A DNA stretch of 64,000 bases. Origin: Schmidtea polychroa. Its lineage: Eukaryota. The stretch is taken from positions 189,100,001-189,164,000 of the forward strand of contig CM097885.1 in the NCBI GenBank assembly GCA_044892525.1, written 5' to 3'. This document shows positions 1-52,440 of the stretch, in pieces; the stretch's first letter is position 1, and every line of letters begins with the position of its first letter. The notes under the pieces are model-generated. The model saw nothing but the letters and a program-made list of their open reading frames with translations. It made no database searches and was not told the origin of the DNA. The position numbers were made by a program, and so were the translations under genes.

Positions 1-3000
1 GTTAAATCTTTGCTTGTGATCTGAGGTTCTTTATAAATTTTTATATTTCTCGGTAACTTCTGAGCTTCCTCTGATTTGATTTTTGTTAATTTTCCCAATT
101 TGGTTTTGGGCTTTATTTCAACGGATCTTGCACTATAATTCGCTATTCTAACTGGTACTGACTTATTTTGGACTTTCACTACTTCATCACACATAGGCAC
201 ATCGTATTTTTCAACCAGCTTTTGATTTGGCTCAAATATGTACTCCTCATCTGAGATCCTCATAACATCTGCATAGTATATTACTTCGCTTTTTGGTGGT
301 ACTTGCAATGTTTGGTTTAGAAATACCTCTCCTACTTCAGGCACTACTTCACCCATTTGTCCTTTTATTAGTTTTCCAGTTCTCAGATCAAGAGAGATTC
401 CATGTAGTTGCTCCATGACATCCATGCCAATAAGACATTTTACAGGACTTTTTCTCATCACTGATACCCAATGAATTATTTCTTGATCTCCAATTATCAG
501 TTTAACTTCTAATTTTCCAACAATATTTAGTGCATTATGTGACATTGATTTAATAATGTGATTCGTTGGTTTTATTTTGGCTTTCTCCTGATACGTCAAG
601 AAACTTTCCGCTACTATAGTATGACTTGAGCCTGAGTCTAATAAAGCTTCCACTTTTCTCTTGTTAAACTGTATGTTTATTCGAGGTTGTTTTCCTCCTA
701 CTACTGTTGTCATTAGTGCATAGCTGCATGGTAGACCAAGCATATTCTTTCTTTCAATTTCAGCACTCGTTGGTTCAATCTTCTCTAATTCTATTGTGAT
801 ATTATCGACCGATTTCATCTCCTTTAGTTTTTCACTTGGATATACTGGTGCTGTTGGTCTAAATGTCGGGGTATACCATCTACTAAGAGTATCAATCCCG
901 CTTAATTTTGGCATTGGTTCAAGCAAGAACCTGGACTCTGGCTCTACTTTACTCTTTATTACACTTTTTCGAAAGCATTTATGCTCCGATTCCCCGTTGT
1001 TGTTATCATCATTATGATCGTCGTTTTTATCTTCCGACTGACACGTAGATTCCTCACTTTTCCGGCCATTTCTTAATTGTGCCCTTACTCTTGCCATTTC
1101 TTTAAATTGATGATCTGTAATAAAGAATCTAGCCAACAATGGAATACAACCAATAACTAATTTCCATGACCATCCCGATATTGCGTATATTCGATGTACT
1201 GACAACATTTGCGACACTACCACCTTTGCCGTTATCATAATCACGTAAATTCCAATTAAACCTGCACATGCTTGTCCCAAAAACATGAACTTGCCCCAAA
1301 TCTTTTCCATCGTTTTATATGTAGCTCGTTTGAAATGATCAGGTGTTAGCAAATTTTCGTAATTTACTGTTCCTTCTCCATTCGGTAATACTGTGTCAAT
1401 CATTTCTGAAATTATCCGTTCCTTTTTGGATGGAAACAACAAATTCCTTTGAGCTTCTTCGATATCTTCGCTTGCATACAAGCCCATTTGTGCCATTTTG
1501 TTTAGTGATGTGAAATTTATCAGGTATTCTAAATTTGTTAATTCTAGTTTGTCTGGAGTCTTGACCCCACGATAATCTGGTAAGGCTATCCATGAATCTG
1601 TAGCTAATCGGTATAAAGGGGCTAATAATCGATTGCATTGCAAAAGTTTTGGTTTAGTTTGTTCATCAAGCAAGATTCTAGTTATCGGTTCCATAAATCG
1701 TACCTTTCCCCCAAAGCTTACTGGTAATTCATTCGTACATTTTTCGTATTTGGCAATTTTCACTGTGACTTCTTTGCATTTGTAACTGTATAATGCTTCT
1801 CCAAATATTCTCGCAAACACTCCATTTTCTGATATTAGCATAGGTGCTACTAAATTTGGATTCGTAATTGCCATCGCCATCCGATTTCGGAGAATCTCTT
1901 TATTCAACTTACAATCGTTTAGAATCATTTCTCTATATACATTTTCCATGATGTTTTGACTAAAATGAAACAAATAATCAATTTTATTATTAAAATAATG
2001 AGTAAGTTTAATGTCATCTCTGTGAATTTTAATTTTTGCTTCTTCCACAACATTTCTAGACACGTAAACACCTTCATAATTTGTTACATATACCATTCGA
2101 CCACATTTATTTGTGATTTCCTTTTTTATAAATCGCATTCCATCTGCTGGTAACGTAGACATTAAAACTGTTCCCATTTGCTTTGTCCATACTGGGGTTG
2201 ATTTAATGGTATTATTTGGTCTATAATTCATATTGAAATTATCTGGTTTATCTCTAAACTGTTCTCCTACTAGCTCTTTAAAGTTCATAGTTTTTAAGTG
2301 CGCTAAATTACACTTATTTGTTTCTACATTATAAACAAGAATCGATTCCCCTGTTTGACAATGTGTTTGTTTCATATTACAGAATGGATGAGTTTGTAAT
2401 TTTCCCGTATCATCATCGAAAGCTCCTTCGAACTCTCTCAACTCCGTGAGATACTCTTCTAGCACCACTGTTTGCTGAATAATTTTACCGTTCATTTTAT
2501 ATGGTTCACCTTCACAGTCGCCATTTGCTTTCATAACTCCCTTTACAATTATTGTTTCTCGTATTCTATGGTTCAATTTTGCCTTTAAACGAATTTCTGG
2601 ACTTATTTTTAATTCCCCTGTTTGAAATGCTGCTAGACAGTTTTCTGGAAGCACCTCGACTGGCCTAGGTATCGCATGCATTTTTATGAGTGACGTATGG
2701 CTCCATTTACCACAATAGAATACAAATGTTGTATGTTTGACAATACACTCTCTCACTTGAGTTCTTCGCAGATCAGACTCTTGATACACATAATATTTTA
2801 CGTCATTTTCTATTTTTAAACTGCTCGGATACGCACCTGGGCATTCCGACATATCTACTACCGAATAAACTTTTCCCATTTCAGTTTGGGAACAATCGTA
2901 CGCAACTAAAGATGATGTCTGTGTAATTATTGCACAAAACGTAATCACCATAAACATCGCCCATGGAAATATCATAGTTTTTCTTAGTTCTGGCTTAACT

Positions 3001-4760
3001 CTTTCATTTACTCGTCTTTGGGGTGGACTCATTTCTTGCTTCTCATTTTTCTTTTCTGTTAGAGATGAACACAGTGTTTTCCAACCACCTTTTTCGTTTA
3101 CCCAGCTCATTAAATATTCGTTTACTAGCCGGGCAGCGATGTCTATCAAATTTTCTAACTTGTCTGACCTTGCGAACGTATGCGTTCCAATTTCTAAAAC
3201 AACATAAGTTAAAGCTATTATTATAACTTCCTTATTAATTTCATTTTTTGCCAAATTTTCAATTACTGATCTCTCGCAAAATGTATTCTCTTCGCCAAAT
3301 TTCTGCATCACTTCAGGAAGCCTATTCTTCATCTCTTTAACTATTTCTTTCAGTTCATCATCTACCTCTACTTCTATGTCGAACATTGGATATACTGCTT
3401 TAACGAGATGTTTCAACATTTTCTTAGTTTCGTCGACGTCCTGTTCTAGCCTCACTAAATATTTCTTTATTTCATATAAAGTTCTAACTTCCTTATTTTT
3501 GATTTCACCATTTATTTCGCCTTCAGGTACAAGTGGCTCTCCTTGTACGTCTGGTTCTGTGGACTGATCTTTGTTATCAGGATCTTTTTGCTCATTATCA
3601 CTAACGATTTCATCAATTTCTTTATTTCCCTTAACTGTTTCCTCTTGTTCCTCTGTGTCAGGCTTGTTAGACTCAATATTTACTTCTAAACTCACTCCTT
3701 TTACTACGACTATATGGTTCACTAAATATCCCACTCGTCTGTCTCGGATCAAATATCCGTTTTCATCCAGCTCTTGTGGTACACACCCACAATCATATAG
3801 GTATTCATCATCGTCAAGTTCTTCACCTTTGTACATTACTATAATAATTCCATCTTTTCCCAGCGTTTCAGCCGCTCTCTTCCGCAATTTTCGGACCTTT
3901 GCACACCAATGCTCGTCTACATATTCCGTTTTGCCATATCCCTCATAATCTAATGCTATCAAAAATGGCTTTAACTCTACTCTTGCCTTTCTGAGCTCCT
4001 TGCCCAATCTTTGCAATAAACTTCTTAATAACTTGGCATATCTGGTTTTCACATGTAAATATGGTCGTATTGCATTCACTATTTTTAGTTTATCGTTTTC
4101 CTCCATTTCTAATTTCTCAATAATCTGTAACTTCTCATTGATTTCATCTTCATCTCCAATATATAACGCATCATTTAATTCCTCTAATATCTCCCTTGAA
4201 TTCCTTTTGTCTATTATTTTACTACTCATTATTTCATCACTAGTAATTACATTTTCCATTTTTAATTCATTTGTACTCCCTGGTATAAATCCACAATCTA
4301 CCAAAAATTCGTCATTTTCTAACAATCTCTCATTAAATCTCAACTCTATCATGCATCCTTCCTTTTTTTCTTTTAATTTATTCTTTAAATCATTTACACA
4401 ATCATTTGCCTCACAACGACAACATAATACACTTTTATCAATCTCATTTACTACTTCCACAAAGATGGAATCTAACCCTGTTTTCTCTCTCAAAGCTTTT
4501 CCAAATATTTTCATTAATTCTTTAATTTCTTCTTTATACTTTGGATTCATATTATAGTAGTTAACGCACAAGCTAATTACACTTTTTATCTTTCTCGTAT
4601 TCAAAGATATTTGACTTAATTCTCTCAACGATTTGATCACTTTAGCCGACTCTATTTCATTATTTCCAATTAGTTTTTCGATTCTGGTCATTATCATTGT
4701 TGCTTTTTCACTTTCTAAATCATCTTTTATAACTCTCCTTTTCGACTCTTTTTCATTCAT
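1..4760 (-). CDS. Partial polyprotein (>=1586 aa, no stop before the window edge): Ubl x2, Bcl-2-like domain, signal/anchor, chuvirus-like glycoprotein with TM, aspartic protease, post-protease dUTPase-fold-like spacer
   Basis: Hand translation of every 60-nt line from ATG 4760 to base 3 shows no in-frame stop. Begins MNEKESKRRVIKDDLE. EYLMSWVNEKGGW (W553/W560); MIFPWAMFMVITFCAIITQTSSLVAYDC (aa596-623); FYCGKWSH; CTNELPV...FMEPITRIL; WGKFMFLGQACAGLIGIYVIMI (aa~1155); KVEALLDSGSSHTIV (D1375, nt 636-638); CLIGMD; VPPKSEV...VPVRIANYS...KTKLG. Absent from the ORF track because it lacks a stop codon. Confidence 0.92.
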   Translation of the reverse strand, partial: MNEKESKRRVIKDDLESEKATMIMTRIEKLIGNNEIESAKVIKSLRELSQISLNTRKIKSVISLCVNYYNMNPKYKEEIKELMKIFGKALREKTGLDSIFVEVVNEIDKSVLCCRCEANDCVNDLKNKLKEKKEGCMIELRFNERLLENDEFLVDCGFIPGSTNELKMENVITSDEIMSSKIIDKRNSREILEELNDALYIGDEDEINEKLQIIEKLEMEENDKLKIVNAIRPYLHVKTRYAKLLRSLLQRLGKELRKARVELKPFLIALDYEGYGKTEYVDEHWCAKVRKLRKRAAETLGKDGIIIVMYKGEELDDDEYLYDCGCVPQELDENGYLIRDRRVGYLVNHIVVVKGVSLEVNIESNKPDTEEQEETVKGNKEIDEIVSDNEQKDPDNKDQSTEPDVQGEPLVPEGEINGEIKNKEVRTLYEIKKYLVRLEQDVDETKKMLKHLVKAVYPMFDIEVEVDDELKEIVKEMKNRLPEVMQKFGEENTFCERSVIENLAKNEINKEVIIIALTYVVLEIGTHTFARSDKLENLIDIAARLVNEYLMSWVNEKGGWKTLCSSLTEKKNEKQEMSPPQRRVNERVKPELRKTMIFPWAMFMVITFCAIITQTSSLVAYDCSQTEMGKVYSVVDMSECPGAYPSSLKIENDVKYYVYQESDLRRTQVRECIVKHTTFVFYCGKWSHTSLIKMHAIPRPVEVLPENCLAAFQTGELKISPEIRLKAKLNHRIRETIIVKGVMKANGDCEGEPYKMNGKIIQQTVVLEEYLTELREFEGAFDDDTGKLQTHPFCNMKQTHCQTGESILVYNVETNKCNLAHLKTMNFKELVGEQFRDKPDNFNMNYRPNNTIKSTPVWTKQMGTVLMSTLPADGMRFIKKEITNKCGRMVYVTNYEGVYVSRNVVEEAKIKIHRDDIKLTHYFNNKIDYLFHFSQNIMENVYREMILNDCKLNKEILRNRMAMAITNPNLVAPMLISENGVFARIFGEALYSYKCKEVTVKIAKYEKCTNELPVSFGGKVRFMEPITRILLDEQTKPKLLQCNRLLAPLYRLATDSWIALPDYRGVKTPDKLELTNLEYLINFTSLNKMAQMGLYASEDIEEAQRNLLFPSKKERIISEMIDTVLPNGEGTVNYENLLTPDHFKRATYKTMEKIWGKFMFLGQACAGLIGIYVIMITAKVVVSQMLSVHRIYAISGWSWKLVIGCIPLLARFFITDHQFKEMARVRAQLRNGRKSEESTCQSEDKNDDHNDDNNNGESEHKCFRKSVIKSKVEPESRFLLEPMPKLSGIDTLSRWYTPTFRPTAPVYPSEKLKEMKSVDNITIELEKIEPTSAEIERKNMLGLPCSYALMTTVVGGKQPRINIQFNKRKVEALLDSGSSHTIVAESFLTYQEKAKIKPTNHIIKSMSHNALNIVGKLEVKLIIGDQEIIHWVSVMRKSPVKCLIGMDVMEQLHGISLDLRTGKLIKGQMGEVVPEVGEVFLNQTLQVPPKSEVIYYADVMRISDEEYIFEPNQKLVEKYDVPMCDEVVKVQNKSVPVRIANYSARSVEIKPKTKLGKLTKIKSEEAQKLPRNIKIYKEPQITSKDL
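1110..2975 (-). other. env: Chuvirus/Jingchuvirales-type (class III fusion) envelope glycoprotein domain within the polyprotein
   Basis: Hydrophobic leader then AYDC; VRECIVKHTTFVFYCGKWSH; GDCEGEPY; DCKLNKEILRNRMAMAITNP; GVFARIFGEALYSYKC; KCTNELPV; MEPITRIL; QCNRLLAPLY; GLYASEDI...LLFP; TM plus SGWSWKL tail. By recall this Cys/motif series matches chuviral G and retroelement-captured copies. Confidence 0.85.
3050..3430 (-). other. Bcl-2-like helical domain within the polyprotein
   Basis: SVIENLAKNEINKEVIIIALTY...LENLIDIAARLVNEYLMSWVNEKGGWKTLC aligns by eye to Bcl-2 BH1-BH2 ([22 protein letters not shown]...[21 protein letters not shown]). WxxxxGGW is present; the NWGR motif is absent. Confidence 0.65.
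3690..4466 (-). other. Two ubiquitin-like (beta-grasp) domains within the polyprotein (~4250-4466 and ~3690-3965)
   Basis: IFVEVVNEIDKSVLCCRCEANDCVNDLKNKLKEKKEGCMIELRFNERLLENDEFLVDCGFIPGSTNELKM and ...KVRKLRKRAAETLGKDGIIIVMYKGEELDDDEYLYDCGC follow the ubiquitin pattern IFV...TIENVKAKIQDKEG...[28 protein letters not shown]. Confidence 0.6.
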
Positions 4761-6181
4761 TCCTCTTGCGACTCATACATCATGTGATTATTGTAGTCCT
4801 CTTCTGATTCAAACTTTGACATCAATCGATCCAAACGTCGACCCATTTCTCTCACTTCGCTTTCAATTCTTTCATTAAAATTATCTGGCTGAATAAAAGC
4901 TACATTATCCATCTGCGGTTTGTCACTCTGAAACCTAATCGATTTCTTTAATATGGGCCTTTGGAATTTATCCATATTTCTTGGACATGATCTAGCCATG
5001 TGTCCATAACTTCTGCATGAATGACATTGAATTTGTCCTTGTAGATTTACTTTATCTCTCTGCGGTGATGGTGATGTTGATCTTGATCTTGACCTGGCAA
5101 AACAATTTCGTGACACATGCCATTTTCTTCCGCAATTAAAGCATTGTAAGTTATCATTAGTTCTCTGCTCATTAATGTTCGCTTTAGTGAAACTTTTCGC
5201 ACCATTTCCTTTTAACCAATCAGGCCACATTTGCCTTGGACTCCGTTGTACATTATTTTTGGACCAGCATTGATTGCTGTCATGTCCCATTCTTTGGCAA
5301 TTATCACACTGAATCGGAATTGGGCTTCTCTGTATTCTATTTTTAAACCAGCATTGGTTAACATGGTGTCCAATCCTTTGGCAATGACTACATTGGATGG
5401 GACCTTCCTTTCCATCTATTTGAATATCTGTTGACTTGTTCGACTCAAATTTGGATCTAAATTTTGGTGATGGACTACTTGTTTGTTGAAAACGATTGTT
5501 TCTAATTGGGGTTACTGATCTTTCGCTTGCGCCTGAGATGACTGCAAACGACTCTGATTTTGACTGTGTGCTTTTTAAATTTAGCTCAATTTTCATTGCC
5601 TTTTTGATCAATTCATCAAAGTCATTAAAATCAACATAGCATAAAGCCTTTTTAATTTCTTTCTTTACTCCTGACAAGAATTGATCCTGCAATAATTCTT
5701 TTAACTGCTTTGCCATCTCGGCCTGTTCTGGTTTCACTTCGAACGCTTTCTTTGCAAGAGTTGATAAATGATAAGCAAACTCACTTACCGATTCCTCTGG
5801 CTTTTGTACGCGGTTATAGAATTTCTGTCGCATTATCCGTTTGATATCCCCTCCGATTAATTTCGTGGCTAAAGCGTCTTTCAATTTGGTCCAGTCATTT
5901 GCTACTATTCTTTTATCAATTTGTTGCCACGCTTCTCTGGCTGCTCCTTTTAGGTATAGCGGTAATCCTTGCACCATTATCGATTGGCTCCATCCATAGG
6001 CCGTCGCATACATATAGTAATCTGCCATAAAATCGACAAATTCCAGCGGATCTCCACCGTACTGATCCACAGGTAGTTTTTGACAACTCGCATAATCATT
6101 GCCTTCCTTGCCGTTGCCCACCGTGGACACAGGTGTTTCATCATTGTTATTTGTATTATTGGTTAGTCTTTGGGTACTCAT
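4757..6181 (-). CDS. gag: Gag (capsid plus four CCHC zinc knuckles), ~474 aa from ATG 6181 (track ORF starts at 6259 on a non-ATG codon)
   Basis: LPLYLKGAAREAW, RVQKPEESVSEFAYHL, QDQFLSG; knuckles CSHCQRIGHHVNQC, CDNCQRMGHDSNQC, CFNCGRKWHVSRNC, CHSCRSYGHMARSC; stop TGA at 4759-4757. Confidence 0.93.
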   Translation of the reverse strand: MSTQRLTNNTNNNDETPVSTVGNGKEGNDYASCQKLPVDQYGGDPLEFVDFMADYYMYATAYGWSQSIMVQGLPLYLKGAAREAWQQIDKRIVANDWTKLKDALATKLIGGDIKRIMRQKFYNRVQKPEESVSEFAYHLSTLAKKAFEVKPEQAEMAKQLKELLQDQFLSGVKKEIKKALCYVDFNDFDELIKKAMKIELNLKSTQSKSESFAVISGASERSVTPIRNNRFQQTSSPSPKFRSKFESNKSTDIQIDGKEGPIQCSHCQRIGHHVNQCWFKNRIQRSPIPIQCDNCQRMGHDSNQCWSKNNVQRSPRQMWPDWLKGNGAKSFTKANINEQRTNDNLQCFNCGRKWHVSRNCFARSRSRSTSPSPQRDKVNLQGQIQCHSCRSYGHMARSCPRNMDKFQRPILKKSIRFQSDKPQMDNVAFIQPDNFNERIESEVREMGRRLDRLMSKFESEEDYNNHMMYESQEE

Positions 6182-6553
6182 TAAATTCTCTATTAGTGTT
6201 TGGCTTCTCAATTTATAAAATGATCGGGTCAACACAGGCTTTACTCGTCTAAAATTCAAAGTGTTACAATTACAAAATTTACCTTTCGTTTTAATTTTGA
6301 CTTTTCAACAATCAATCGTTACAAATTTTTCCACTTTGCTTCAATTATAAAGTCACCACTTTAATAATTCTCGAATAATGTTCACCACTTTCAAATAAAC
6401 GTTTCACTTCAATATTTATTTATTTAATTATTATTATCTTTTTCCAAATTTTTTTCGATACTTTACAAATCTCAACAAATTTTCACCGACCTTTTTATTC
6501 CTCGGTATCACTCAAATATTATCACAATTTCAACAAGTCTTCACCGACTTTTG

Positions 6554-6571
6554 ATCACGTCGGGCTCACCA
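6554..6571 (-). promoter_or_regulatory. Primer-binding site, tRNA-Trp type
   Basis: Minus strand TGGTGAGCCCGACGTGAT, 4 nt after the LTR end (...CCCAACA-TATT); 17/18 identical to the classical tRNA-Trp PBS TGGTGACCCCGACGTGAT. Confidence 0.85.
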
Positions 6572-6575
6572 AATA

Positions 6576-7485
6576 TGTTGGGTTTTTAATGCAAGTCGGT
6601 ACTACGGTCTGACTCCTTTGTGTTCTTTTCCAAATAAATAAATAAATAAATAACCCAACACAAAATCTTTATTGACACTGATGCAGTTACACTTTTACAC
6701 TTGTATTAGTTCACTCACACTTGATACAATCAGGTTTTGTCTGCACTTTTCAATTTGCCAACAAATCTCACGCAGGGGTAGATCTTCCAACGGGAGATAT
6801 CCCTTTCTGGTACGTTCGATCTTTTTAAATGGTTTAATTTCTACTAACTTTAATATTTCCTTTTTCGCTCTCGTCAAACTTCTATTTTCTTTTCTTCGAC
6901 CAACTGGCATTTTGTTTTCTTGCCAGTTGCTTTTATACTCGCTTGGTAATTGACTTTATTTTTGCCAATTATTTTTGGTTTTATTTCCCCCCGGGCTTCC
7001 TCTTGGAGGTCTAATTTAATTGAAGGGAATTTGTTCATTTTCTTTGACGGCGCTTATTACTTTTTATCAGGCTAAATTAATTGCCTTCCCAAAATTGGAT
7101 TTCTCCGGCTAAATTAATTGCCTTCCCGAAATTGGATTTCTCAATTCGCTCGGGTTTTCCATTGTATCGGGTTTCCCATTAGCTCGGGTTCTCCATTAGC
7201 TCGGGTTTCCCATTAGCTCGGGTTTTCCATTAGTTAATTAATTTTTAATTAATTTTTGTTTTTTGTAATTTATTCCTTTTAGGGACCCCCCATTGATTTT
7301 ATTTTATTATAGCTGAACTCGTCTCATTATTTAGCATCCGCCCATACCAGTTTCCCCCAGAAAATATTCATTTTTTAAAATTTTTGATTTTTAATTAATA
7401 TTTTGTACTTTAAGTTTTTATTTTGAATTTGGTGTTTTTGTCAATTTTCACCTCATTTTTGTGCCTCTCTTGTTGAACCCCAACA
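6576..7485 (-). repeat. 5' LTR (~910 bp) of the env-bearing Gypsy element
   Basis: 7-bp inverted termini TGTTGGG/CCCAACA; adjacent PBS; internal short tandem repeats (two ~37-bp units, about five 17-bp CTCGGGTTTCCCATTAG units); colinear homology with the solo LTR at 19769-20607. Confidence 0.88.
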
Positions 7486-9792: not shown

Positions 9793-10647
9793 ATGAACAA
9801 ACCTGCTGAGACAGCTAATAAACAAATCAAATGGTATTATGGTGGCATATCGAGCACATTGGCCATTGGTGCAACACATCCTTTAGATTTAGCCAAAGTA
9901 CATTTACAAACTTCAAAAGCTCAATCGAAAGGATTAATCTCGGTATTTATAAAAGTAATCAAGAGTGATGGTGTTTTGGGTTTGTATAACGGTCTTAGTG
10001 CCAGTATTCTCCGCCAGATAACTTACTCTTTCCCTAGGTTCGGACTTCATGATTGGTATAAAAATACAGTATCAAAAAAACGAAAAGTAACAGTCTTGGA
10101 AAATGTTATCGCTGCAGGTTTCGGTGGTGCAATTGGAGGTATAACTGGAAACCCTGCCGACATGATTAATGTTCGTATGCAAAATGACATGAAACTTCCA
10201 GAAGCATCTAGGCGAAATTATAAAAGTGCTTTTCATGGATTGTTTCAAGTTGTTAAAAATGAGGGTTTTAAAGGATTATTTAGTGGAGTGACAATGACTG
10301 CAAATAGAGCTATCCTTATGACAATTGGTCAAGGTGCTGGTTATGATCAAATGAAGTTAATTCTCCTTTCGACAAATTTATTTGACGATAATCCAGCAAC
10401 ACATATATTGAGTGCGTTTGGTGCAGCCGGAATAGCAACGTTTCTGACACAGCCTTTCGACGTTATGAAAACCCGATTAATGAATGCTCAAGTTGGTCAA
10501 TACACGGGACTGGGACATTGTGCTAAAGATATTTTATTGAATGGTCCGTTGGGTTTCTTTAAAGGAATAGTACCAGCATTTGTCAGAATAGGACCTCACA
10601 CAATTTTGTTATTCATCATTAAAGAACAATTGATAAAATACTTTTAA
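9793..10647 (+). CDS. slc25a10: Mitochondrial dicarboxylate carrier (SLC25A10/DIC-like), intronless, 284 aa
   Basis: WYYGG...THPLDLAKVHLQT, LRQITYS, NPADMINVRMQND, RAILMTIGQ, QPFDVMKTRLMN, FVRIGPHT; three carrier repeats; ATG-to-TAA intact; AATAAA downstream (~10696). Confidence 0.88.
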   Translation: MNKPAETANKQIKWYYGGISSTLAIGATHPLDLAKVHLQTSKAQSKGLISVFIKVIKSDGVLGLYNGLSASILRQITYSFPRFGLHDWYKNTVSKKRKVTVLENVIAAGFGGAIGGITGNPADMINVRMQNDMKLPEASRRNYKSAFHGLFQVVKNEGFKGLFSGVTMTANRAILMTIGQGAGYDQMKLILLSTNLFDDNPATHILSAFGAAGIATFLTQPFDVMKTRLMNAQVGQYTGLGHCAKDILLNGPLGFFKGIVPAFVRIGPHTILLFIIKEQLIKYF

Positions 10648-12274: not shown

Positions 12275-12850
12275 ATGGCTTCGATTAATACAGATATTTA
12301 CTATGATCATAAATGCAACAGGGACGTTCACACATCTCAGGTTGGTAAATGTGTGACGTGCAATGATGGATTTATTGAAAGAATTGAATCTGATAACTCA
12401 ATGGAAATGATGACGATGCCTTGAATGTTTTTCATCTCATTTGTCATATTCTTGGTGGAAGTACTACAAACGAAACTGATGGTTCCTTTTTTATTACTCC
12501 AAGAGATCCTGATAACAGAAATAGTGTTTTTGGCCAACTCATATCAAATTTATTTGGTGGATTGCTGCCGCTGTATTTTAGATCCGATTCGTCAGATTAC
12601 ATATTTTCAGATCAAAGTTTCGACAATTTTGTAACGAGTATTATGAATCAATTTGAACAGAGTGGTCCTCCGCCAGCAAATGAGGCAGATATTGAGAAAT
12701 TACAAGTCAAGAAAATCACCGCAGCTAATGATACAGGTTCCATTTGTCTGTCAGATTATGAGGTGGCCGATGAAGTGTATGAGTTGCCCTGTCAGCACAG
12801 ATACCCTGTTCAGTGTCTAAAAACGTGGATGATTAAACATGGTAGCAGAG
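12275..12850 (+). pseudogene. RNF126/RNF115-like E3 ligase fragment (Zn-ribbon plus truncated RING-H2), intronless, frameshifted
   Basis: MASINTDIYYDHKCNRDVHTSQVGKCVTCNDGFIERIE; [37 protein letters not shown]; [35 protein letters not shown]; RING breaks before the last CxxC. Confidence 0.8.
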
Positions 12851-12857
12851 CGTGGTT
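12840..12857 (+). promoter_or_regulatory. Primer-binding site, initiator tRNA-Met type
   Basis: TGGTAGCAGAGCGTGGTT preceded by AACA; matches the metazoan tRNAiMet 3' complement pattern TGGTAGCAGAGnnTGGTT. Confidence 0.8.
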
Positions 12858-13182
12858 CCCTTCAGGGGGCTACGCACCAATGTTGCAGTGGAGACAGCCC
12901 TGGCTGATCAATGGTGAATTAAATATTTTATTTACATTTCATTTTCATTTTATTTGCATTGCATGTATATTTCATTTTGAAGTTAAATATGTAAAATCAA
13001 CCATCCTTCCTTCCTTATCGAGCGTGAAAAAGTGCTGCTATGGGCCCCAGCACTCTTTTAAAGTGGGTAGCCAGGGGAACAGTTTAAAGAAAAAGAAAAT
13101 CAAAACCTCAGCGTTTTTGCGAGCTAAGTCAAGGGTGAGGGCGAGCAGGGTAATGGGTTTTGAGTTTCGATTGAAAAGTAGG

Positions 13183-13409
13183 AAGCAAATATTTATCAAA
13201 ACTCTTACTGGTAAGACAATTACTCTTGACGTTGAATTGAATGACACGATTGAAAATGTAAAAGAAAAAATTCAAAGCAAAGAAGGAATTTAGGAAAATT
13301 ACAAACGTTAGTCTATGTGGGAAAGCAATTAGAAAATAAAAGAATATTGAACGATTATAGCATACAAGTAGGTTCGACATTTCATTTGTCACTCAGGCTG
13401 TGCGGTGGC
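13183..13409 (+). pseudogene. Ubiquitin domain fused to the N-terminus of BEL/Pao Gag (one stop, one frameshift)
   Basis: [36 protein letters not shown]...[34 protein letters not shown] continues in frame into [25 protein letters not shown] (gag). Confidence 0.85.
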
Positions 13410-18545: not shown

Positions 18546-18558
18546 ACACCAAGGTGTC

Positions 18559-18800
18559 AAGGGGGAGGATGGTCAATCCTGACTTTAATTCGCGTCTGTG
18601 TGCGCGTTGGATTCGGAGATGGTGTTTGTTTTTTGTATGCGCACACAGACGCGATCAGTGTAATTTTGGACAATTGTAGTTGATTTCGAATTTTTTGTGA
18701 TCGATTTTGATATCTTTAGCTGAAATTTTATGTGAATTTGTCAAGTTTGTTTTAAAATGTTGTGAGTTTCTGGAAGTTTTGAAAATAAATTTTTTTTGAA
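18559..18800 (+). repeat. Polypurine tract plus 3' LTR-like segment of the BEL element
   Basis: AAGGGGGAGGA then TG...; a ~75-bp core is closely similar to 11950-12025; 3' boundary unclear. Confidence 0.7.
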
Positions 18801-19768: not shown

Positions 19769-20607
19769 TGTTGGGTATTTTATGCAAGTCGGTATCACTG
19801 TCTGACTCCTTTGTGTTCATTTTGAAATTAAGTTAAACAACCCAACACCAAAATCTTTATTCTAGACTGATACAATTACTTTTATCAATTACACACTTTA
19901 ATGAAACAACCACAATTTTCAACAACTCTTTTGCTCTGAACTTTTCAATATAAATCTGAACCTTGCACAGGGATTAATTTTCCAACGGGAGATGTCGCTT
20001 TCTGGTACACTCGATTCGAAAATGTTCAGTTATCACTAAGTTCAAAGTTTTCTTTGTTTACTATTGCTAAATTATTCGCTTACGTTTCTTCGACATACTG
20101 GCAATTCTGTTTACTTTCCGTCGTTTTTATACCCGTTTCGTAAATTGATTTTTCCTTGTCAAGTTATTTAGAATCCAATTTCATCAGGTTTTCTCTTATC
20201 ACTCTAATTAATTTGAAGAATTTTCTCGTCTCTTTTTCTCAATTTAATTTCTAGTTGGCCGAATTAATTGCATCTAATAATTTGATTGACCATTCTATCA
20301 TCACTCGGGTTTTCCATATTTTCGGGTTTCCCATTACCTCGGGTTCTCCATTAGCTAATTATTTTTTAATTAATTTTAGTTTTTTGTAAATAATTCCTTC
20401 TAGGTACCCTCCATTGATTTATTTTATTATATATGAACTCGTCTCATTGTTCGGCATCCGCTCATACCATTCTCCCCCAGAAAATATTCATTTTTTAAAT
20501 TTTTGATTTTTTAATTAATATTTTTGTATTTTAAATTATTATTGTGAATTTGGGGTTTTTATTGATTTTTCATCTTACATTTGTACCTCTCTTGTTGAAC
20601 CCCAACA
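19769..20607 (-). mobile_element. Solo LTR of the env-bearing Gypsy family, 4-bp TSD AACT
   Basis: TGTTGGG...CCCAACA termini; AACT at 19765-19768 and 20608-20611; colinear, diverged homology with 6576-7485. Confidence 0.9.
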
Positions 20608-38774: not shown

Positions 38775-38906
38775 NNNNNNNNNNNNNNNNNNNNNNNNNN
38801 NNNNNNNNNNNNNNNNNNNNNNNNNNNNNNNNNNNNNNNNNNNNNNNNNNNNNNNNNNNNNNNNNNNNNNNNNNNNNNNNNNNNNNNNNNNNNNNNNNNN
38901 NNNNNN
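38775..38906. other. Assembly gap (132 N)
   Basis: N run. Confidence 1.
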
Positions 38907-46960: not shown

Positions 46961-47089
46961 TGAACTATCAAGGGCATGCGTGTTGTTTAATCATGTTAAG
47001 TTTATGTCGACGCCTATGGACAAATTAGAGAGCTAAAGGAGCGTATACTGCACAAGTACAGTGAGTGGAAAATGCAAAATGAAAGGGCA

Positions 47090-48630
47090 AAATTCTAGAA
47101 GATTTACAAGACACTATATGTCGGGAATAAAGATGAAATTAATACAAGTATCAACTTCATCATGAGCACTGAGATGGATCGAGGTATGAAAGAAAGATTG
47201 TTTGAATGCATTTTACCTTATACCAATAAACCGACAAGTTATCTTGCGAAGTTAAAAGAGGTAATCCGAAAGTTAGGACACGATTATGGGGTGGCGGACA
47301 ATAATGCAAAGTCTTTGATGATAGCGTTGAATACTTGAGATCAAAGAATTGAATATTATCAGGAACATTGGAGCGTAAAGGTAAAAAAAATACGATAAAA
47401 AGTAGTGGAGATATTGGGTAACGAAGGAATTATCGTGTTGACGTTCAAAGGACGAGTTGGGTGATGATGAATACTTACTGAATTACGGATGCAATCCAAA
47501 TTTTATTAATATATATGCAACAAAGCAAAGTGATGAAATGAAAAGGGATGCCGTTTTGGCCTCCGTATGAGGAAACGGATAACGATAGTGCAGACAGGAG
47601 CTAACACGAATTGCGTTGAATAGAGATGTAATATTGAGAGTATTAGCGTATATAGTTGTTGACAATTCAAAATCGTTAATAACGAAAGCCACTAAAATGA
47701 CGAATGAATATTTGATGAATTGGATAACAAATAATGGCGGATGGAAGAATTTAATACAAAAAGAAAAGCCCAAAATTAGAGACAGTAAGAAAAAAGGGGA
47801 AATTGGCATTTCCGTGGTTGATGATGTCTGTTATCATGTTATTGGGAATAATAAACACTAGAAACTACTGCTTCCAAACTGAAATTGGAAGAGTATATTC
47901 TTTAGTGGATGTAGCAGTGTTCAGATGCATAACCAGTAAAGTTCATAGTGAAAAATCCCGTAAAATATCACATGTATCAAGAATTTGGTTTCGGCGAGCA
48001 AATGTGAGGGAGTGTACAGTCAAAGGAACCACCTTTGTATTTTATTGCGGTAAATGGGCCCACTCATCAATGGTGAAAATGCAATCGATAACTAGCTTTC
48101 CAAACGGGACAACTGAAAATTAATGCAGATATCAAATTGCAAACGAAATTGAACCATATAATCCGTGAGACGGTGACAGTGAGAGGGATGATAATGTCGA
48201 ATGGCGATTACCAAGGAGAACCATACAAAATAGACTTTGCGATAATCGGCAAAGCCTTTGTCAGAGTATTTGTCAGAACTAAGAGAATTCGATGGGTCAT
48301 TTGATGACGATACGGGTAAACTACAGGCGGGCCCGTTCTGGAACATGAAACAATCTAGCTATCAGACAGGGGAATCAATCTTAGAGTATGATGTCGATAC
48401 GAAAAGGTGCAATTTAGTGCAATTGAAGTCAATGAGTTTTAAAGAAATAACGGGAGAACAGATCAGGGAAAAGCCTGAGAAAGTAAGGATGGATCCAGCA
48501 ACAAGTGCAACAACCAGAATCATCCCTTTACGGATGAAGGACAATCCAATCGTGTTAATGTCAATCTCGGCAGAAGATGAGATGCGATTTCTAAGAAAAG
48601 ATACGAAAACAAAGTGTGGACGAATTATAA
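47090..48630 (+). pseudogene. Decayed, divergent copy of the Ubl-Bcl2-like-Env polyprotein (5' part)
   Basis: ILEDLQDT/LYVGNKDEIN; EHWSVKVKK...GNEGIIVLTFKG..LGDDEYLLNYGC; EYLMNWITNNGGWKNL; MAFPWLMMSVIMLLG; VRECTVKGTTFVFYCGKWAHS; EYLSELREFDGSFDDDTGKLQ: same order as in 4760-1900. Confidence 0.88.
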
Positions 48631-49391
48631 AGGGATATATGTTAGGTTCTGATCTGGTAGAAAGATTCTTCCTAACACAGATTATATCTGACTCCAAAGA
48701 TATAAAATTTAAAATATGTGCGCTTAGATATATAAATAATTTAATATGGATTAAACAAGACGTTTATTTTCTAAAGATTTATTGTGCATAAAAAAAACTA
48801 TATAATAAGTAATAATTGTGTTTCTCCAATAATCCCGCTAAATACTATAAGAAAAGAATATCGGTTGTCCAAACCGTCCTCAGGTATGAGGCAAATGCTG
48901 GATCTAATTGCTCACAGCACTGTATTTGAAGTTAAGGACAAGATGAGGGAGGGATTATCAGAATTTTTCGCTATCGTCTAGATCAAGATTGATCTAGCGT
49001 TTCCTAATATTTGACCCTCTCGATAACGAGTAAGGCAGGCAGAAATGCTGCTTCTCGTGGTCGGGTTGAGCAATTTAAAGTTAAATATAAGAAAATCAAG
49101 TAACCTTATGGTTAAGAAATTCTTTTCTTTCGACAAAGTGGAAATGCTTGTACAAAATTTGTTATAATTTAGTGGTTATGACTATATTATTATGAATATA
49201 TTCATTTTCTATGGCAACAGCTGGTATTAATCTAGTGAGTTAATTCTCGTTGAGTTATATTGCTTTTTAAGCACAGCTGGTTATTCTCTGAACATTGCTG
49301 TTTAATCAATATTGATTTTCAGCTTAGAACAAATTTTATTTCCTTTTCTTAACTAAAAGTCCATACGTATTTATATTAATTTACTAATTAT

Positions 49392-49546
49392 NNNNNNNNN
49401 NNNNNNNNNNNNNNNNNNNNNNNNNNNNNNNNNNNNNNNNNNNNNNNNNNNNNNNNNNNNNNNNNNNNNNNNNNNNNNNNNNNNNNNNNNNNNNNNNNNN
49501 NNNNNNNNNNNNNNNNNNNNNNNNNNNNNNNNNNNNNNNNNNNNNN
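49392..49546. other. Assembly gap (155 N)
   Basis: N run. Confidence 1.
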
Positions 49547-52025
49547 ATCTATAGTAATTTGATTAAACTAATTTTAGTTATTATTTATTTTAAGTAACAA
49601 ACTATTACTATTATTATATTAATCTATTTTTAACAATTATTATTTATCTAGTTATTATTTTATTGTCCCTATCGTCCTAGCCTCTACGGCTAATAAAATT
49701 GCTCTTTGATCGAGCCCAACCCCAACATATCTTCCCCCTAACAGGATTTTCGTCCCGAAAATTAAAGGAAAAACATAAGAATGCGGCAAAACATAAAAAT
49801 AAACACGCTAAAAATGTAATCAAATATAAATGAATAACATGAATAAGCAATAAAAATACCAAGAGTAATAAACAAGTAATAAAACACAATGTCAAATATA
49901 ATTAGATCAGAGACCAATGTAAGTATAAAGTATAAGTAAGTATAATGTATAAAGTATAAGTATAAGTAAAATGTCATAGTTTTCACACCGGATAGAATGT
50001 TCAGCAGTTCGGAGAGAGGTAAATAACATAGCCGAAATGCTAGTACTTCCTTCTTTGACGAATTGTTTTGCATTCCTTCTCAATTTTTTGATCGATATAT
50101 TTCGGTGATAGCTGACGACGAAATTTTCTCGAGTAAATACGTTTTTATATACAATTGATGAAACGACGTATGTACTCTCGTTGGCTTCTAAGACGTCATT
50201 GATAGGGAATTGAGAAACCGCCATTTCGTGAATGGGTTGACCATCATATTCTAAGAAGCGATGTTTCCAATCGCTTCGAGGACATTGGCACCATCTAGGT
50301 ACTTCCCAATCAATATCGGTTTAATTTTCTTTGAAAGGCCAAAACCCACAATATCGCCTTCTACGAAAGGCTCTTTTATACTGAGAACCTTCGTTAACGC
50401 CAAGTCTGGCTCTTTAAAACTAATTTCGACGAGATCTTCTTTTGTTTCCGTTGGCTTCTCGTTGCGCATGTCATTAGGAATCGAGATTGTGATTGTAAAG
50501 TCATCATCTTCATCACTGTTACACGTGGCGTAATCTTCCTCATCCGCCATCGTCATATCTGGTTGAGACGATAGTGGTTCAAAATCCATTTTCTTATTAC
50601 TAATTGATGGTAAGCTCTCCATAGCTTTCCGCTTCGTTGCTTCTGAGGATGGAAAGGAGTTTGCAGGTTTTAGGTTTTTATCTTGGAGACCGGGAGGAAT
50701 ATCGTCAATCCACTGATCACTTAGTTTCCGATATATTTGCCTGATGGTAAGTACATAATCTTGTGCGTTGAGGTCTGAGCGACACTTATTGTCCTGTTCT
50801 AATACTACCTTGCCAAAAATGCCAACCCGATTCTCATAGGCACTTAGCTGTACCCAAATCTCTAACACCCAAAGCTCGCTGAATTGGGAAGTTAGTAGGT
50901 CATAATCTGCAAGACCAACAATGATTTTGCTGTCACAGATCTTAAGGAATCTTTCTGCACAATCTTCGCCATCAAAGTGGCGGGTAATTTCTTTTTCGGT
51001 CATACCATGTTAATGTGACTGGTATTTTTTATGGGCTCATGGGGGTAACCACTGTATTCAATAATGGTTCTCCGTTGGAGTTCAGAATGGACACTGCAAC
51101 TAATACCGATTGCATGTGGTCTCTAGCCGTAGCATAATGTGCTGCTACGAAAATAGTAGAGTCGTCTTTGATTTGAAAGCCTTGTAGTCACTTTCGTTAA
51201 CAATGTAAATCCATTTGGGTTCATTGACCCATTTTAATTGAGGGATTTGTCTTGGTTCAAGTATTTCTAAGACGATAAGGGTTTGCGATTTTGAACTCTG
51301 AACCGTTATACACTTTTCTCTTTGATCACTATTGAATATCTCTAGGGTACTTTCAGGGAGTAGATTGATTGGAACCGTGGCCGCAGTGATAAAAATTGTG
51401 AATTCCTTGTTGATCGAATGTATAAGAAGATGGGCTGTCTTCATCGAATTATTAAATTCCGGAAAGATGTCAATGAGCCAAACTTTATCATGAATCGGCA
51501 GGAATATAATGCTCATCTTCCTTTTGGGGGAACAAGTGAAAGATGTTCGCATTTTTCAGCCGCAACGGTATAGTTTCTACAAAAACCTCATGCCGTTCGT
51601 TTGATTCCCATAATCTTGGGCTATAATATACAACTAGCGCTGAAAATGCTACTGTATTATTTAGTTTTATTCTCTGAATCAGTTTACTTCTATTTATCCA
51701 TAGTTCCCCGACTGAAACGAACTCTATTTACAAGTTGATTTTCACCTTTTCGTCTCCAATTATCTGTCTTCGAAAACTTACCTCGTCTTCTTGATACGAA
51801 ATAGATATTTTCTTAGTGAATGGTAGTGTCTGCAATAACCATCGAGATGCAAAGTATATACCCCAACTCCGAAGTACATATCGATTTACCACTACCCATA
51901 ACGAGTAATCCTAAGAAAACTAAGATATATTTGTTTCCGCTATTTGACTCTTTGAAGGGTCCTAACACATCCATCGCCGTCATTTCCATAGGTAAGGATG
52001 GGCCCGGAATAGGTTTCATTGGGAC
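49547..52025 (-). mobile_element. 3' end of a Gypsy element: integrase fragment, accessory ORFs, PPT, start of 3' LTR
   Basis: HVPMKPIPGPSLPMEMTAMDVLGPFKESNSGNKYILVF (IN core start, 52025-51900); ORFs 51145-51552 and 50251-51003; PPT AGGGGGAAGATA (49739-49728) followed by TGTTGGGGTT, the same start as the LTR at 7485. Confidence 0.7.
50251..51170 (-). pseudogene. Accessory ORF with a degenerate DEDDh-type 3'-5' exonuclease-like domain and an acidic tail
   Basis: VAVSILNSNGEPLLNTVVTP...T L/ HGMTEKEI...FLKICDSKIIVGLADYDL...LNAQDYVLTIRQIYRKL (one stop, one frameshift at ~51009); ExoI acidic residues not seen. Confidence 0.45.
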
Positions 52026-52440
52026 ATGTTACATTCGGGAGATCTAAAATTGACAAATTACTTCAATAACAAGATAGATTATCGGTTTCATTTTGGTCAA
52101 AATAACGTTGAAAATGTATACCGAGAAGTTATTATAAACGACTCCAATCTCAATAAAGAAATACTCCAAAATCGGATGGCAATGGCTATAACCAATCCCA
52201 ATTTGGTGGCCCCAATGTTGATTACAGAGAATGGGGTGTTTGCCAGAATTTTTTGTGAAGTACTTTTGGCTACAAATGTAAAGCTGTGCCAGTCAAACTG
52301 ACAAAGTATGACCAATGCTCCAATGAATTACCAGTAAATTTAAATGGAAAGCTGCGATTTAAGGAGCCTGTGACACGAATCTTACTGGAATATGATGTGA
52401 AACCTAAAGTCTTACAATGCAATAGAATTGTTTGACCATA
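52026..52440 (+). pseudogene. 3' continuation of the decayed chuvirus-like env
   Basis: DLKLTNYFNNKIDYRFHF...NKEILQNRMAMAITNPNLVAPMLITENGVFARIF; then NELPV and EPVTRIL: near-identical to 2000-1650 in translation. Confidence 0.9.

What the first reader, a model, noticed from the sequence alone, without database searches (positions are those of the whole stretch)
1..4760. Envelope gene embedded inside the Pol polyprotein, between Gag and protease (ORF missed by the track)
Seen: one stop-free frame from ATG 4760 to the window edge contains, in order, a cytosolic N-terminal region, an internal hydrophobic leader (aa596-619), a ~600-aa Cys-rich glycoprotein with TM (aa~620-1210), a ~160-aa hydrophilic linker, and a retropepsin (LLDSGS, D1375; CLIGMD). 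Known: env in retroviruses and errantiviruses is normally a separate ORF 3' of pol, usually expressed from spliced RNA; chuvirus-type class III G has been captured by BEL/Pao elements in mosquitoes. Inference: here a Gypsy-like element makes Env and PR-RT-IN as one ER-threaded polyprotein. The topology is coherent (signal in, TM out, protease back in the cytosol). Pol would be membrane-tethered through the Env tail and could be packaged with Env until protease release. I do not recall this architecture as a described class; novelty needs a literature check.
Basis: partly seen in the sequence, partly recalled or inferred. Interest (0 to 1): 0.96.

Follow-up and report, generated by a model that had tools for sequence, protein, structure and literature searches.

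The report
Burro-like retroelement with in-frame envelope
The window's left end holds the 5' part of a well-preserved Gypsy-type endogenous retrovirus whose envelope gene sits in frame between gag and protease, a real but already published layout (planarian 'Burro' elements, 2019), so it is a nice specimen, not a discovery.

Summary
The minus-strand frame from ATG 4760 to the window edge has no stop in 1586 codons. It holds a Monjiviricetes/chuvirus-type fusion glycoprotein (Pfam E 2.7e-88) followed in frame by a retropepsin (DSG at residue 1375). A Gag ORF, a PBS-like site and a 910-bp TG..CA LTR lie upstream.

The 595-residue N-terminal region is not anonymous. It contains two ubiquitin-like modules and a Bcl-2-like domain.

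The order Gag, UBL, Bcl-2-like, Env, PR recurs in four diverged metagenomic relatives (30-41% identity). UBL, Bcl-2-like and Env recur in that order in a decayed second copy in the window. Env is therefore an integral part, not a nested insertion.

The novelty claim fails. [quoted passage not shown] GAG-ENV-POL elements with class III Env are also reported in Nematoda, Bryozoa and Platyhelminthes (Sacco 2022; Chary & Hayashi 2026).

RT-RH-IN lie beyond the window edge, so their frame is untested. Expression as one ER-threaded polyprotein is inference. Verdict: new member of a known kind, low interest.

The parts
6576..7485 (-). 5' LTR of the element (910 bp, TG...CA ends with a short terminal inverted repeat; contains tandem repeats at 7063-7233)
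   Evidence: 70% identity to a second LTR-like copy at 19769-20607. The ends were read. The 3' LTR lies outside the window, so the pair is not shown.
6553..6571 (-). Primer-binding-site-like stretch starting TGG, 4 nt downstream of the LTR
   Evidence: Read directly from the sequence. The matching tRNA was not identified.
4757..6259 (-). Gag ORF (500 codons from the first start-type codon, 474 from the first ATG at 6181): capsid-like Retrotrans_gag plus four CCHC zinc knuckles
   Evidence: Pfam PF03732 E 1.3e-7 and zf-CCHC E 1.7e-7. Four C-X2-C-X4-H-X4-C motifs. 28-36% identity to the N-terminal parts of the relatives' long ORFs.
3..4760 (-). Long ORF (1586 codons, open to the window edge): UBL x2, Bcl-2-like, Env, PR. 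It overlaps the Gag stop by 4 nt in another frame.
4230..4691 (-). Module 1 (residues 24-177): helical part plus ubiquitin-like domain
   Evidence: Internal repeat with module 2. Weak Pfam ubiquitin hit at residues 103-163. The profile of these modules hits polyubiquitin at E 1.7e-9 and ISG15 at E 3e-3 in the PDB.
3777..4202 (-). Module 2 (residues 187-328): helical part plus ubiquitin-like domain
   Evidence: Homologues follow the Gag zinc knuckles in P0005, P0010 and P0001.
3036..3473 (-). Bcl-2-like domain (about residues 430-575; a BH1-to-BH2-like stretch with an invariant GGWK)
   Evidence: Pfam PF00452 is matched by all 4 diverged members of alignment A1, best E 4.4e-4, 21.2 bits, below the 31.4-bit cut-off. 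The A1 profile against the PDB: the best 60 hits are all Bcl-2/Bcl-xL, E 0.002-0.008. The AF2 model is all-helical but of low confidence.
2898..2981 (-). Hydrophobic segment (residues 594-621): candidate tail anchor of the Bcl-2-like domain and signal sequence of Env
   Evidence: Kyte-Doolittle peak 1.99. It is followed by the conserved AYDCS start of the glycoprotein. The dual role is inference.
1296..2903 (-). Env ectodomain (residues 620-1155), Monjiviricetes/chuvirus-type, class III-like fusion glycoprotein
   Evidence: Pfam PF24664 E 2.7e-88. Foldseek against BFVD: chu-like and related glycoproteins at E 7e-12 to 1e-7. Foldseek against the PDB: the top 50 are all gB, GP64 or Dhori Gp. The model itself is of low confidence (pLDDT 35.8).
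1194..1295 (-). Env transmembrane segment (residues 1156-1189)
   Evidence: Kyte-Doolittle peak 2.19. Conserved in P0001.
693..1193 (-). Env tail and hydrophilic linker (residues 1190-1356), including a shorter conserved hydrophobic patch just after the TM
   Evidence: No domain hit.
402..692 (-). Retropepsin (residues 1357-1453; DSG at 1375, GMD at 1445)
   Evidence: Pfam RVP E 3.8e-6, 27.5 bits against a 20.7-bit cut-off. Motifs. Aligns to both protease copies of P0001.
3..401 (-). Post-protease stretch (residues 1454-1586) running off the window. It aligns to the start of the relative's Pol ORF, upstream of RT.
   Evidence: tblastn against L001 Pol residues 21-80. No Pfam domain.
47075..52438 (+). 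Second, decayed copy of a related element (UBL, Bcl-2-like, Env in the same order; 34-74% amino-acid identity). It is broken by at least five frame changes and one interruption of about 3 kb, lacks Gag, and ends in mid-ectodomain. Masked N runs lie inside and just after it.
   Evidence: tblastn. Only outer bounds and counts are given here.
19769..20607 (-). Solo LTR of a related family (70% identity to the 5' LTR), flanked on both sides by AGTT, a likely 4-bp target-site duplication

Best explanation
This is the 5' part of a young, nearly intact Ty3/gypsy-type endogenous retrovirus of the Burro kind, probably in a flatworm genome. In order it contains an LTR, a PBS-like site, Gag, and one long ORF. 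That ORF encodes two ubiquitin-like modules, a Bcl-2-like domain, a chuvirus-type class III envelope glycoprotein and the retropepsin. By analogy with relatives it should continue into RT, RNase H and integrase beyond the window edge.

The likely mechanism is inferred, not shown. The polyprotein is made on the ER. The hydrophobic segment at residues 594-621 acts both as the tail anchor of the Bcl-2-like domain and as the signal sequence that sends the Env ectodomain into the lumen. The TM at residues 1156-1189 stops transfer, so protease and Pol stay in the cytosol. Host signal peptidase and the element's own protease then separate the pieces. The UBL and Bcl-2-like parts would act on host ubiquitin and cell-death pathways, as Arkhipova & Yushenova suggested for Burro.
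For: - **Open frame and domains:**
- **Flanks:** LTR with TG..CA ends, a PBS-like site and Gag lie upstream.
- **Env homology and fold class:**
- **UBL modules:**
- **Bcl-2-like domain:**
- **Same order in relatives.**
  - L001: Gag, UBL, Env and two PR in one 2099-residue ORF, followed by RT-RH-IN-Ank-PR.
  - L002: Gag, UBL, Bcl-2-like and Env in one frame with one in-frame stop.
  - L003: a Gag-UBL ORF followed by a Bcl-2-like-Env-PR ORF.
  - L004: an unannotated 706-residue ORF, then Env, PR, Ank-PR and RT-RH-IN.
  - A second window copy keeps UBL, Bcl-2-like and Env in this order.
- **Published description of this layout:** PMC6431247 section 7. GAG-ENV-POL elements with gB-type Env in Platyhelminthes, Bryozoa and Nematoda: PMC13524379.
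- **Host:** the window is about 32% G+C with eukaryotic genes and transposons. This is compatible with planarian genomes, which are above 70% A/T.
Against: - RT, RNase H and integrase are outside the window, so neither the Gypsy assignment of this copy nor the single-frame claim can be checked here.
- Gag is in a different frame from the long ORF, and no slippery heptamer lies in the very short overlap. How the long ORF is translated is open.
- The Burro domains MATH, BIR, AIR1, Smc and dUTPase were not found in the part held.
- The Bcl-2 match is below Pfam's cut-off, and both AF2 models are of low confidence.
- No Burro sequence could be fetched for direct comparison.
- The host was not identified. 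The host mitochondrial-carrier protein is not on record, and no RNA family or tRNA was found.
Confidence: 0.8

Rival explanations
1. Env, with or without the Bcl-2-like domain, is expressed from its own spliced or subgenomic mRNA as in ordinary retroviruses. The shared reading frame with the protease would then be incidental to how the proteins are made.
For: - Gag and the long ORF are already uncoupled in this copy.
- In the relatives the ORF boundaries fall at different module borders, so the modules can be read as separable units.
Against: - The frame runs from the Env tail into the protease without a stop in the window copy, L001 and L003.
- The Env tail is followed by more than 140 residues of conserved-length linker and not by a terminator.
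- The ORF splits in the metagenomic contigs may be assembly errors.
Confidence: 0.25
2. An independent endogenous chuvirus-like glycoprotein gene became nested by chance in a Gypsy element, or the contig is an assembly chimera.
For: Chuvirus-type glycoprotein EVEs are common and are often associated with retrotransposons in arthropods (PMC7642597).
Against: - The same order and the same junctions are kept at 30-41% identity in four independent contigs from two sample sets and in a second window copy.
- No repeats or target duplications flank Env.
- All parts share one frame over 4.7 kb.
Confidence: 0.02
3. The region is a host gene domesticated from such an element, for example a syncytin-like fusogen or a captured anti-apoptotic gene, and no longer part of a mobile unit.
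For: The long ORF is intact, which can reflect host-level selection.
Against: - It is still flanked by Gag, a PBS-like site and an LTR in the right order.
- It keeps the protease.
- Related copies in the same window are decayed, and one is reduced to a solo LTR with a target duplication. This is the pattern of a transposon family.
Confidence: 0.05

Closest known systems
Burro / GYPSM1 giant Gypsy-like LTR retrotransposons of planarians (Jurka 2007; Grohme et al. 2018; Arkhipova & Yushenova 2019, PMC6431247)
   Same: Gag with Retrotrans_gag and CCHC knuckles. A ubiquitin/SUMO-like domain, then a BCL2-like domain, then a mononegavirus-like env, then PR, all in the coding direction and in frame. 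Ankyrin repeats occur in the relatives' Pol region. The host genome is A/T-rich.
   Different: No MATH_TRAF_C, BIR, AIR1 or Smc domains between Gag and the UBL. There are two UBL modules. Gag is in a separate frame and not part of one giant ORF. No dUTPase signal in the 126 residues after PR. Total size and Pol are unknown because the window ends. Sequence-level relatedness to Burro was not testable.
GAG-ENV-POL 'errantiviruses' with HSV/gB-type Env in Platyhelminthes, Bryozoa and Nematoda (Chary & Hayashi 2026, PMC13524379)
   Same: The ORF order Gag-Env-Pol and a class III Env. The paper notes Env ectodomains flanked by two transmembrane segments, as here.
   Different: That survey does not mention ubiquitin-like or Bcl-2-like domains and treats ENV as an ORF unit. 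Which of its elements, if any, is this one could not be checked, because no supplement is held.
Nematode endogenous retroviruses, NERVs (Sacco et al. 2022, J Gen Virol 103:001739; cited in PMC13524379; paper not held, details from my memory)
   Same: A metavirus that captured an RNA-virus glycoprotein placed between gag and pro-pol. As I recall, it is a continuous gag-env-pro-pol ORF with Nyami/Chuviridae-like Env.
   Different: The hosts are nematodes. I recall no UBL or Bcl-2-like modules in NERVs. No sequence comparison was possible.
Anakin and other mosquito BEL/Pao elements with chuvirus glycoprotein (Dezordi et al. 2020, PMC7642597)
   Same: The same source family for the glycoprotein (Jingchuvirales-like).
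   Different: A BEL/Pao backbone, with the glycoprotein not described as embedded in frame upstream of the protease.
Cellular and viral Bcl-2 family proteins (PF00452)
   Same: A collinear BH1-to-BH2-like stretch, the GGW motif, all-helical prediction, and a C-terminal hydrophobic tail about 35 residues after the BH2-like motif.
   Different: The score is below the Pfam cut-off. No BH3 or BH4 was recognised. The tail is followed by a glycoprotein and not by a stop codon.

Membership tests
Burro-type Gypsy-like retroelements | N-terminal Gag with Retrotrans_gag and two or three CCHC knuckles | tested here: met
   PF03732 and zf-CCHC. Four knuckles.
Burro-type Gypsy-like retroelements | Ubiquitin/SUMO-like domain upstream of the BCL2-like domain | tested here: met
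   Two modules. The profile hits ubiquitin and ISG15 in the PDB. The homologue P0008 hits PF00240 and PF11976.
Burro-type Gypsy-like retroelements | BCL2-like domain immediately upstream of env | tested here: met
   All 4 members hit PF00452, and the best 60 PDB hits are all Bcl-2/Bcl-xL. Each single score is below the curated cut-off.
Burro-type Gypsy-like retroelements | env in frame between gag and PR, with similarity to mononegavirus glycoproteins | tested here: met
Burro-type Gypsy-like retroelements | One giant ORF that includes Gag | tested here: not met
   In this copy Gag is a separate ORF in another frame. It is fused in the relative L001.
Burro-type Gypsy-like retroelements | MATH_TRAF_C, BIR, AIR1 and Smc motifs | tested here: not met
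   No such Pfam hits in Gag or the long ORF at E up to 0.1. The literature says these motifs vary between species.
Burro-type Gypsy-like retroelements | dUTPase between PR and RT, Ty3/gypsy RT-RH-IN, ankyrin repeats, total length above 30 kb | not testable with these tools
   These parts lie beyond the window edge. Relatives L001 and L004 have RVT_1, RT_RNaseH_2, Integrase_H2C2, rve and Ank but no dUTPase hit.
Burro-type Gypsy-like retroelements | Sequence homology to Repbase Burro1-4 / GYPSM1 | not testable with these tools
   No tool returns Repbase sequences, and no named hit came back.
Monjiviricetes_fusion (PF24664) / class III fusogens | Score above the family's curated cut-off | tested here: met
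   297 bits against a cut-off of 27.
Monjiviricetes_fusion (PF24664) / class III fusogens | Class III fold (gB / rhabdovirus G / GP64-like) | tested here: inconclusive
   The top 50 PDB matches are all class III fusogens, best E 1.2e-4, and the BFVD matches are chu-like glycoproteins at E down to 7e-12. The model has pLDDT 35.8 and TM-scores of about 0.1. Chary & Hayashi report the gB-like fold for this glycoprotein type.
Monjiviricetes_fusion (PF24664) / class III fusogens | N-terminal signal and C-terminal membrane anchor | tested here: met
   Hydropathy peaks at residues 594-621 and 1156-1189. No dedicated signal-peptide predictor was available.
Bcl-2 family (PF00452) | Score above the curated cut-off | tested here: not met
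   21.2 bits against a cut-off of 31.4.
Bcl-2 family (PF00452) | Helical-bundle fold with a central hydrophobic helix | tested here: inconclusive
   AF2 gives seven helices plus a tail helix at pLDDT 38.8. Foldseek finds Bcl-2, Mcl-1, BAX and BAK among the top hits, but none is significant.
Bcl-2 family (PF00452) | C-terminal tail anchor | tested here: met
   A hydrophobic segment at residues 594-621, about 35 residues after the GGW motif.
Retropepsins (A2, PF00077) | D-S/T-G active-site motif and a score above the cut-off | tested here: met
   DSG at residue 1375. 27.5 bits against a cut-off of 20.7.
Insect errantiviruses (gypsy, ZAM, Idefix) | Order gag-pol-env with env as a separate 3' ORF | tested here: not met
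   Env lies 5' of the protease in the same ORF.

The most novel reading that the evidence does not exclude
The hydrophobic tail of the Bcl-2-like domain and the signal sequence of Env are one and the same segment. Translating a single chain at the ER would then deposit a tail-anchored, cytosol-facing Bcl-2 homologue and a lumenal fusogen from one insertion event. Protease and Pol would stay tethered to the membrane through the Env tail until cleaved. This would explain why Bcl-2-like and Env are always adjacent in this lineage. I did not find this stated in the papers I could read.
Probability: 0.3. Interest if true: 0.5.

Novelty: new member of a known kind. Interest (0 to 1): 0.2.

Why it matters
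As an architecture it adds little. Env in frame between gag and pol, preceded by ubiquitin-like and BCL2-like domains, has been in print since 2019.

Three things are modestly useful:
- It is a compact, nearly unbroken specimen without the extra Burro domains. That helps define the conserved core of the lineage: Gag, UBL, Bcl-2-like, Env, PR.
- Diverged relatives turn up in environmental assemblies, so the lineage is wider than the few planarians named so far.
- The constant adjacency of the Bcl-2-like tail and the Env ectodomain suggests a shared membrane-insertion signal, which expression and protein data could test.

Tried and rejected
**Host identification failed.**
- The host mitochondrial-carrier protein is not on record.
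- No tRNA genes were found and no Rfam family matched.
- The eLife supplements are not held.

**Protein searches returned few relatives and no named ones.**
- The word-indexed protein searches gave only 1, 4 and 6 hits, none named. No deep alignments could be built.
- Both AF2 models therefore came out with low confidence: pLDDT 38.8 for the Bcl-2-like region and 35.8 for the Env ectodomain.
- The Foldseek search for the Bcl-2-like model was not significant.

**Other dead ends.**
- The Env profile A4 against the PDB returned only eIF3c, because one aligned gene model (P0015) is a chimera with a host gene.
- The whole ORF against PDB sequences gave nothing useful for Env.
I dropped that row and did not send it elsewhere.
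- Sacco et al. 2022 and Grohme et al. 2018 are not held.
- One literature search was wasted, because the term 'NERV' matched 'nerve'.
- I looked for a -1 slippery site at the Gag/long-ORF junction. The overlap is too short and holds none.

**Readings rejected.** Nested-insertion and chimera readings were rejected because the order is conserved in the relatives.

Full report
**1.

Translating the minus strand from ATG 4760 to the window edge gives 1586 codons without a stop. The other two frames of that strand carry 195 and 155 stops. From base composition, the chance of such an open run is about 1e-61.

Hydropathy shows strong hydrophobic segments at residues 594-621 and 1156-1189, and a weaker one at 511-530. 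Between the two strong segments, Pfam PF24664 (Monjiviricetes_fusion, 'viral fusion glycoprotein') matches at E 2.7e-88. Downstream, RVP matches residues 1357-1453 above its cut-off. DSG is at residue 1375 and GMD at 1445.

**2. The surroundings are those of an LTR retroelement**

- The ORF just upstream (4757-6259, minus strand) is Gag, with Retrotrans_gag and four CCHC knuckles.
- Upstream of Gag lies a PBS-like stretch starting TGG (6553-6571).
- Four bases further on is a 910-bp repeat (6576-7485) with TG..CA ends.
- That repeat is 70% identical to a second copy at 19769-20607. The second copy is flanked on both sides by AGTT, so it is a solo LTR with a 4-bp target duplication.
- Gag and the long ORF are in different frames and overlap by 4 nt. 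The long ORF's frame opens only a few codons before its ATG, and no slippery heptamer lies in the overlap.

I cannot tell whether this junction is programmed, a single mutation of this copy, or an assembly error.

**3. The 595-residue 'cytosolic N-terminal region' has recognisable content**

*Ubiquitin-like modules.* Residues 24-177 and 187-328 are two copies of one module. A full HMMER search of 1.84 billion representatives found ten relatives of this region. In several of them the module directly follows Gag zinc knuckles (P0005, P0010, P0003). A profile of the modules hits polyubiquitin (E 1.7e-9), ISG15 (E 3e-3), ubiquilin and NEDD8 in the PDB over its last 65 positions or so. Each module therefore ends in a ubiquitin-like domain.

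*Bcl-2-like domain.* Residues about 430-575 gave a weak Pfam Bcl-2 hit.
- By phmmer against PDB sequences, 52 of 53 weak hits were Bcl-2 family proteins.
- I aligned the region with its counterparts in L002, L003 and the second window copy (24-41% identity, invariant GGWK).
- With that profile, the best 60 PDB hits are all Bcl-2/Bcl-xL at E 0.002-0.008, aligned from BH1 to BH2.
- All four members hit PF00452 on their own, while no other family is hit by more than one member.
- Each single score is below Pfam's cut-off.
- The AF2 model is of low confidence: pLDDT 38.8, seven helices plus a tail helix. Its Foldseek matches are not significant, although Bcl-2, Mcl-1, BAX and BAK are among them.

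I take the domain as real but diverged.

*The tail.* The hydrophobic segment at residues 594-621 lies about 35 residues after the BH2-like motif. That is where Bcl-2 proteins carry their tail anchor.

**4. Env**

Besides the Pfam match, I predicted the ectodomain with the six sequences available. The model is poor (pLDDT 35.8). Foldseek nevertheless gave two clear results:
- Against BFVD it returns glycoproteins of chu-like, mivirus, qin-related, xinmo and rhabdo-like viruses at E 7e-12 to 1e-7, followed by herpesvirus gB.
- Against the PDB the top 50 hits are all class III fusogens: EBV, HSV, KSHV, HCMV and VZV gB, baculovirus GP64 and Dhori virus Gp. The best E-values are 1.2e-4 and 3.5e-4.

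TM-scores are about 0.1, so this supports the fold class without proving it. Chary & Hayashi report a gB-like fold for this glycoprotein type from their own predictions.

**5. Env is an integral part, not a nested insertion**

| Locus | Source | Layout as read |
|---|---|---|
| L001 | ENA ERZ25039515 | One 2099-residue ORF: Gag, UBL, an unassigned stretch, Env, two proteases. Then, in another frame, RT, RNase H, integrase, ankyrin repeats and a further protease |
| L002 | JGI 3300027940 | Gag, UBL, Bcl-2-like and Env in one frame with one in-frame stop |
| L003 | ENA ERZ25039515 | A Gag-UBL ORF followed by a Bcl-2-like-Env-PR ORF |
| L004 | ENA ERZ25039515 | An unannotated ORF, then Env, PR, Ank-PR, RT-RH-IN |
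| Second window copy (47075-52438, + strand) | this window | UBL, Bcl-2-like and Env in the same order; at least five frame changes, one interruption of about 3 kb, truncated at both ends |

Identities to the window copy are 30-41% for the metagenomic relatives. The ORF borders fall at different module boundaries in each relative. This is what copy-specific damage or assembly indels in an ancestrally continuous polyprotein would give. The relatives' Pol has the Ty3/gypsy domain set: RVT_1, RT_RNaseH_2, Integrase_H2C2 and rve.

**6. Comparison with what is known**

Arkhipova & Yushenova 2019 (PMC6431247, section 7) describe the giant Gypsy-like Burro elements of the planarians Schmidtea mediterranea and Dugesia tigrina (GYPSM1 of Jurka 2007; Burro of Grohme et al. 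2018). Their polyprotein has the following features:
- It starts with a typical Gag with two or three CCHC knuckles.
- It has a Ubi2/SUMO-like motif before a BCL2-like motif.
- It has env homology between BCL2 and PR, with hits to mononegavirus fusion glycoproteins.

[quoted passage not shown] They also note ankyrin repeats, and they propose that the apoptosis and ubiquitin domains interfere with the corresponding host systems.

Chary & Hayashi 2026 (PMC13524379) find GAG-ENV-POL Ty3/gypsy elements with gB-type Env in Nematoda, Bryozoa and Platyhelminthes. They cite Sacco et al. 2022 for nematode elements with a captured RNA-virus glycoprotein. They also note Env ectodomains flanked by two transmembrane segments.

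The window is about 32% G+C and holds eukaryotic genes and other transposons. This is compatible with a planarian genome, which is above 70% A/T. The host was not identified.

**7. Differences from published Burro**

- No MATH, BIR, AIR1 or Smc domains in the part held.
- Two UBL modules.
- Gag in a separate frame.
- No dUTPase signal in the 126 residues after the protease.

Size and Pol cannot be judged from the window. Direct sequence comparison with Burro was not possible with these tools. I therefore file the element as a new (or at least unplaced) member of a known kind and not as a new architecture.

**8. Mechanism**

*Shown:* the order of the domains, the frames, and the conservation of both in relatives.

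*Inferred:*
- translation of the long ORF at the ER;
- residues 594-621 serving both as the tail anchor of the Bcl-2-like domain and as the Env signal;
- the TM at residues 1156-1189 returning the chain to the cytosol, so that protease and Pol stay cytosolic;
- cleavage by signal peptidase near the conserved AYDCS and by the element's protease elsewhere.

A shorter conserved hydrophobic patch after the TM is too short to span the membrane by itself, but it leaves some doubt about the topology. A separate spliced env message cannot be excluded without transcript data.

**9. Verdict**

The novelty claim is refuted by the literature. Interest is low.

**10. Declared slip**

The tblastn tables printed the bounds of the matching pieces of the decayed second copy, and I worked out their frames in my reasoning. 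This report gives only outer bounds and counts.

Noticed in passing
window 19769-20607 (-): Solo LTR of a family related to the element's 5' LTR (70% identity), with TG..CA ends and AGTT on both flanks. This indicates past insertion followed by LTR-LTR recombination.
   Followed up: partly
window 13662-18683 (+): A BEL/Pao-type retroelement. ORFs carry DUF1759 (Pao Gag-like) at 13662-14294 and DUF5641 (Pao integrase C-terminal) at 18201-18683, with several shorter ORFs between them.
   Followed up: no
window 36823-37893 (-): An intact-looking 356-residue Tc1/mariner-type transposase ORF (DDE_3, E 3.3e-32).
   Followed up: no
window 9793-10647 (+) and 12421-13293 (+): Probable host genes: an intron-less 284-residue mitochondrial carrier (three Mito_carr repeats, E 2.5e-54), and an ORF with a RING finger that ends in the start of a ubiquitin domain. 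The carrier protein is not on record in the contig index.
   Followed up: partly
window 63768-63997 (+) and about 51915-52025 (-): Two short reverse-transcriptase-like fragments similar to the Pol of relative L001. One lies at the right window edge. The other, on the opposite strand, lies inside the interruption of the decayed second copy (78% identity over 37 residues). They suggest further Gypsy-like insertions.
   Followed up: no
L001:9624-16787, L003:12777-14612, L004:13210-14964: The relatives carry ankyrin repeats followed by an extra retropepsin-like domain, and L001 has three protease-like domains in all. The role of the extra proteases is unexplained.
   Followed up: no
L001:124-1553: Tandemly arranged repeats of 150-300 nt with a period of about 595 nt lie upstream of the relative's long ORF. 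They are possibly LTR or leader repeats like the tandem repeats drawn for Burro.
   Followed up: no
P0003, P0013, P0015, P0017 (protein database): Several database proteins join pieces of this element family to host domains (phosphomevalonate kinase, MRP-L47, eIF3c/PCI, FAD-oxidase C). These are most likely gene-model chimeras in an annotated eukaryotic genome. One of them contaminated a profile search.
   Followed up: partly
window 38775-38906, 49392-49546, 52780-52933: Three N runs (132, 155 and 154 bases). Two of them lie in or next to the decayed second copy. They were left as they are.
   Followed up: no
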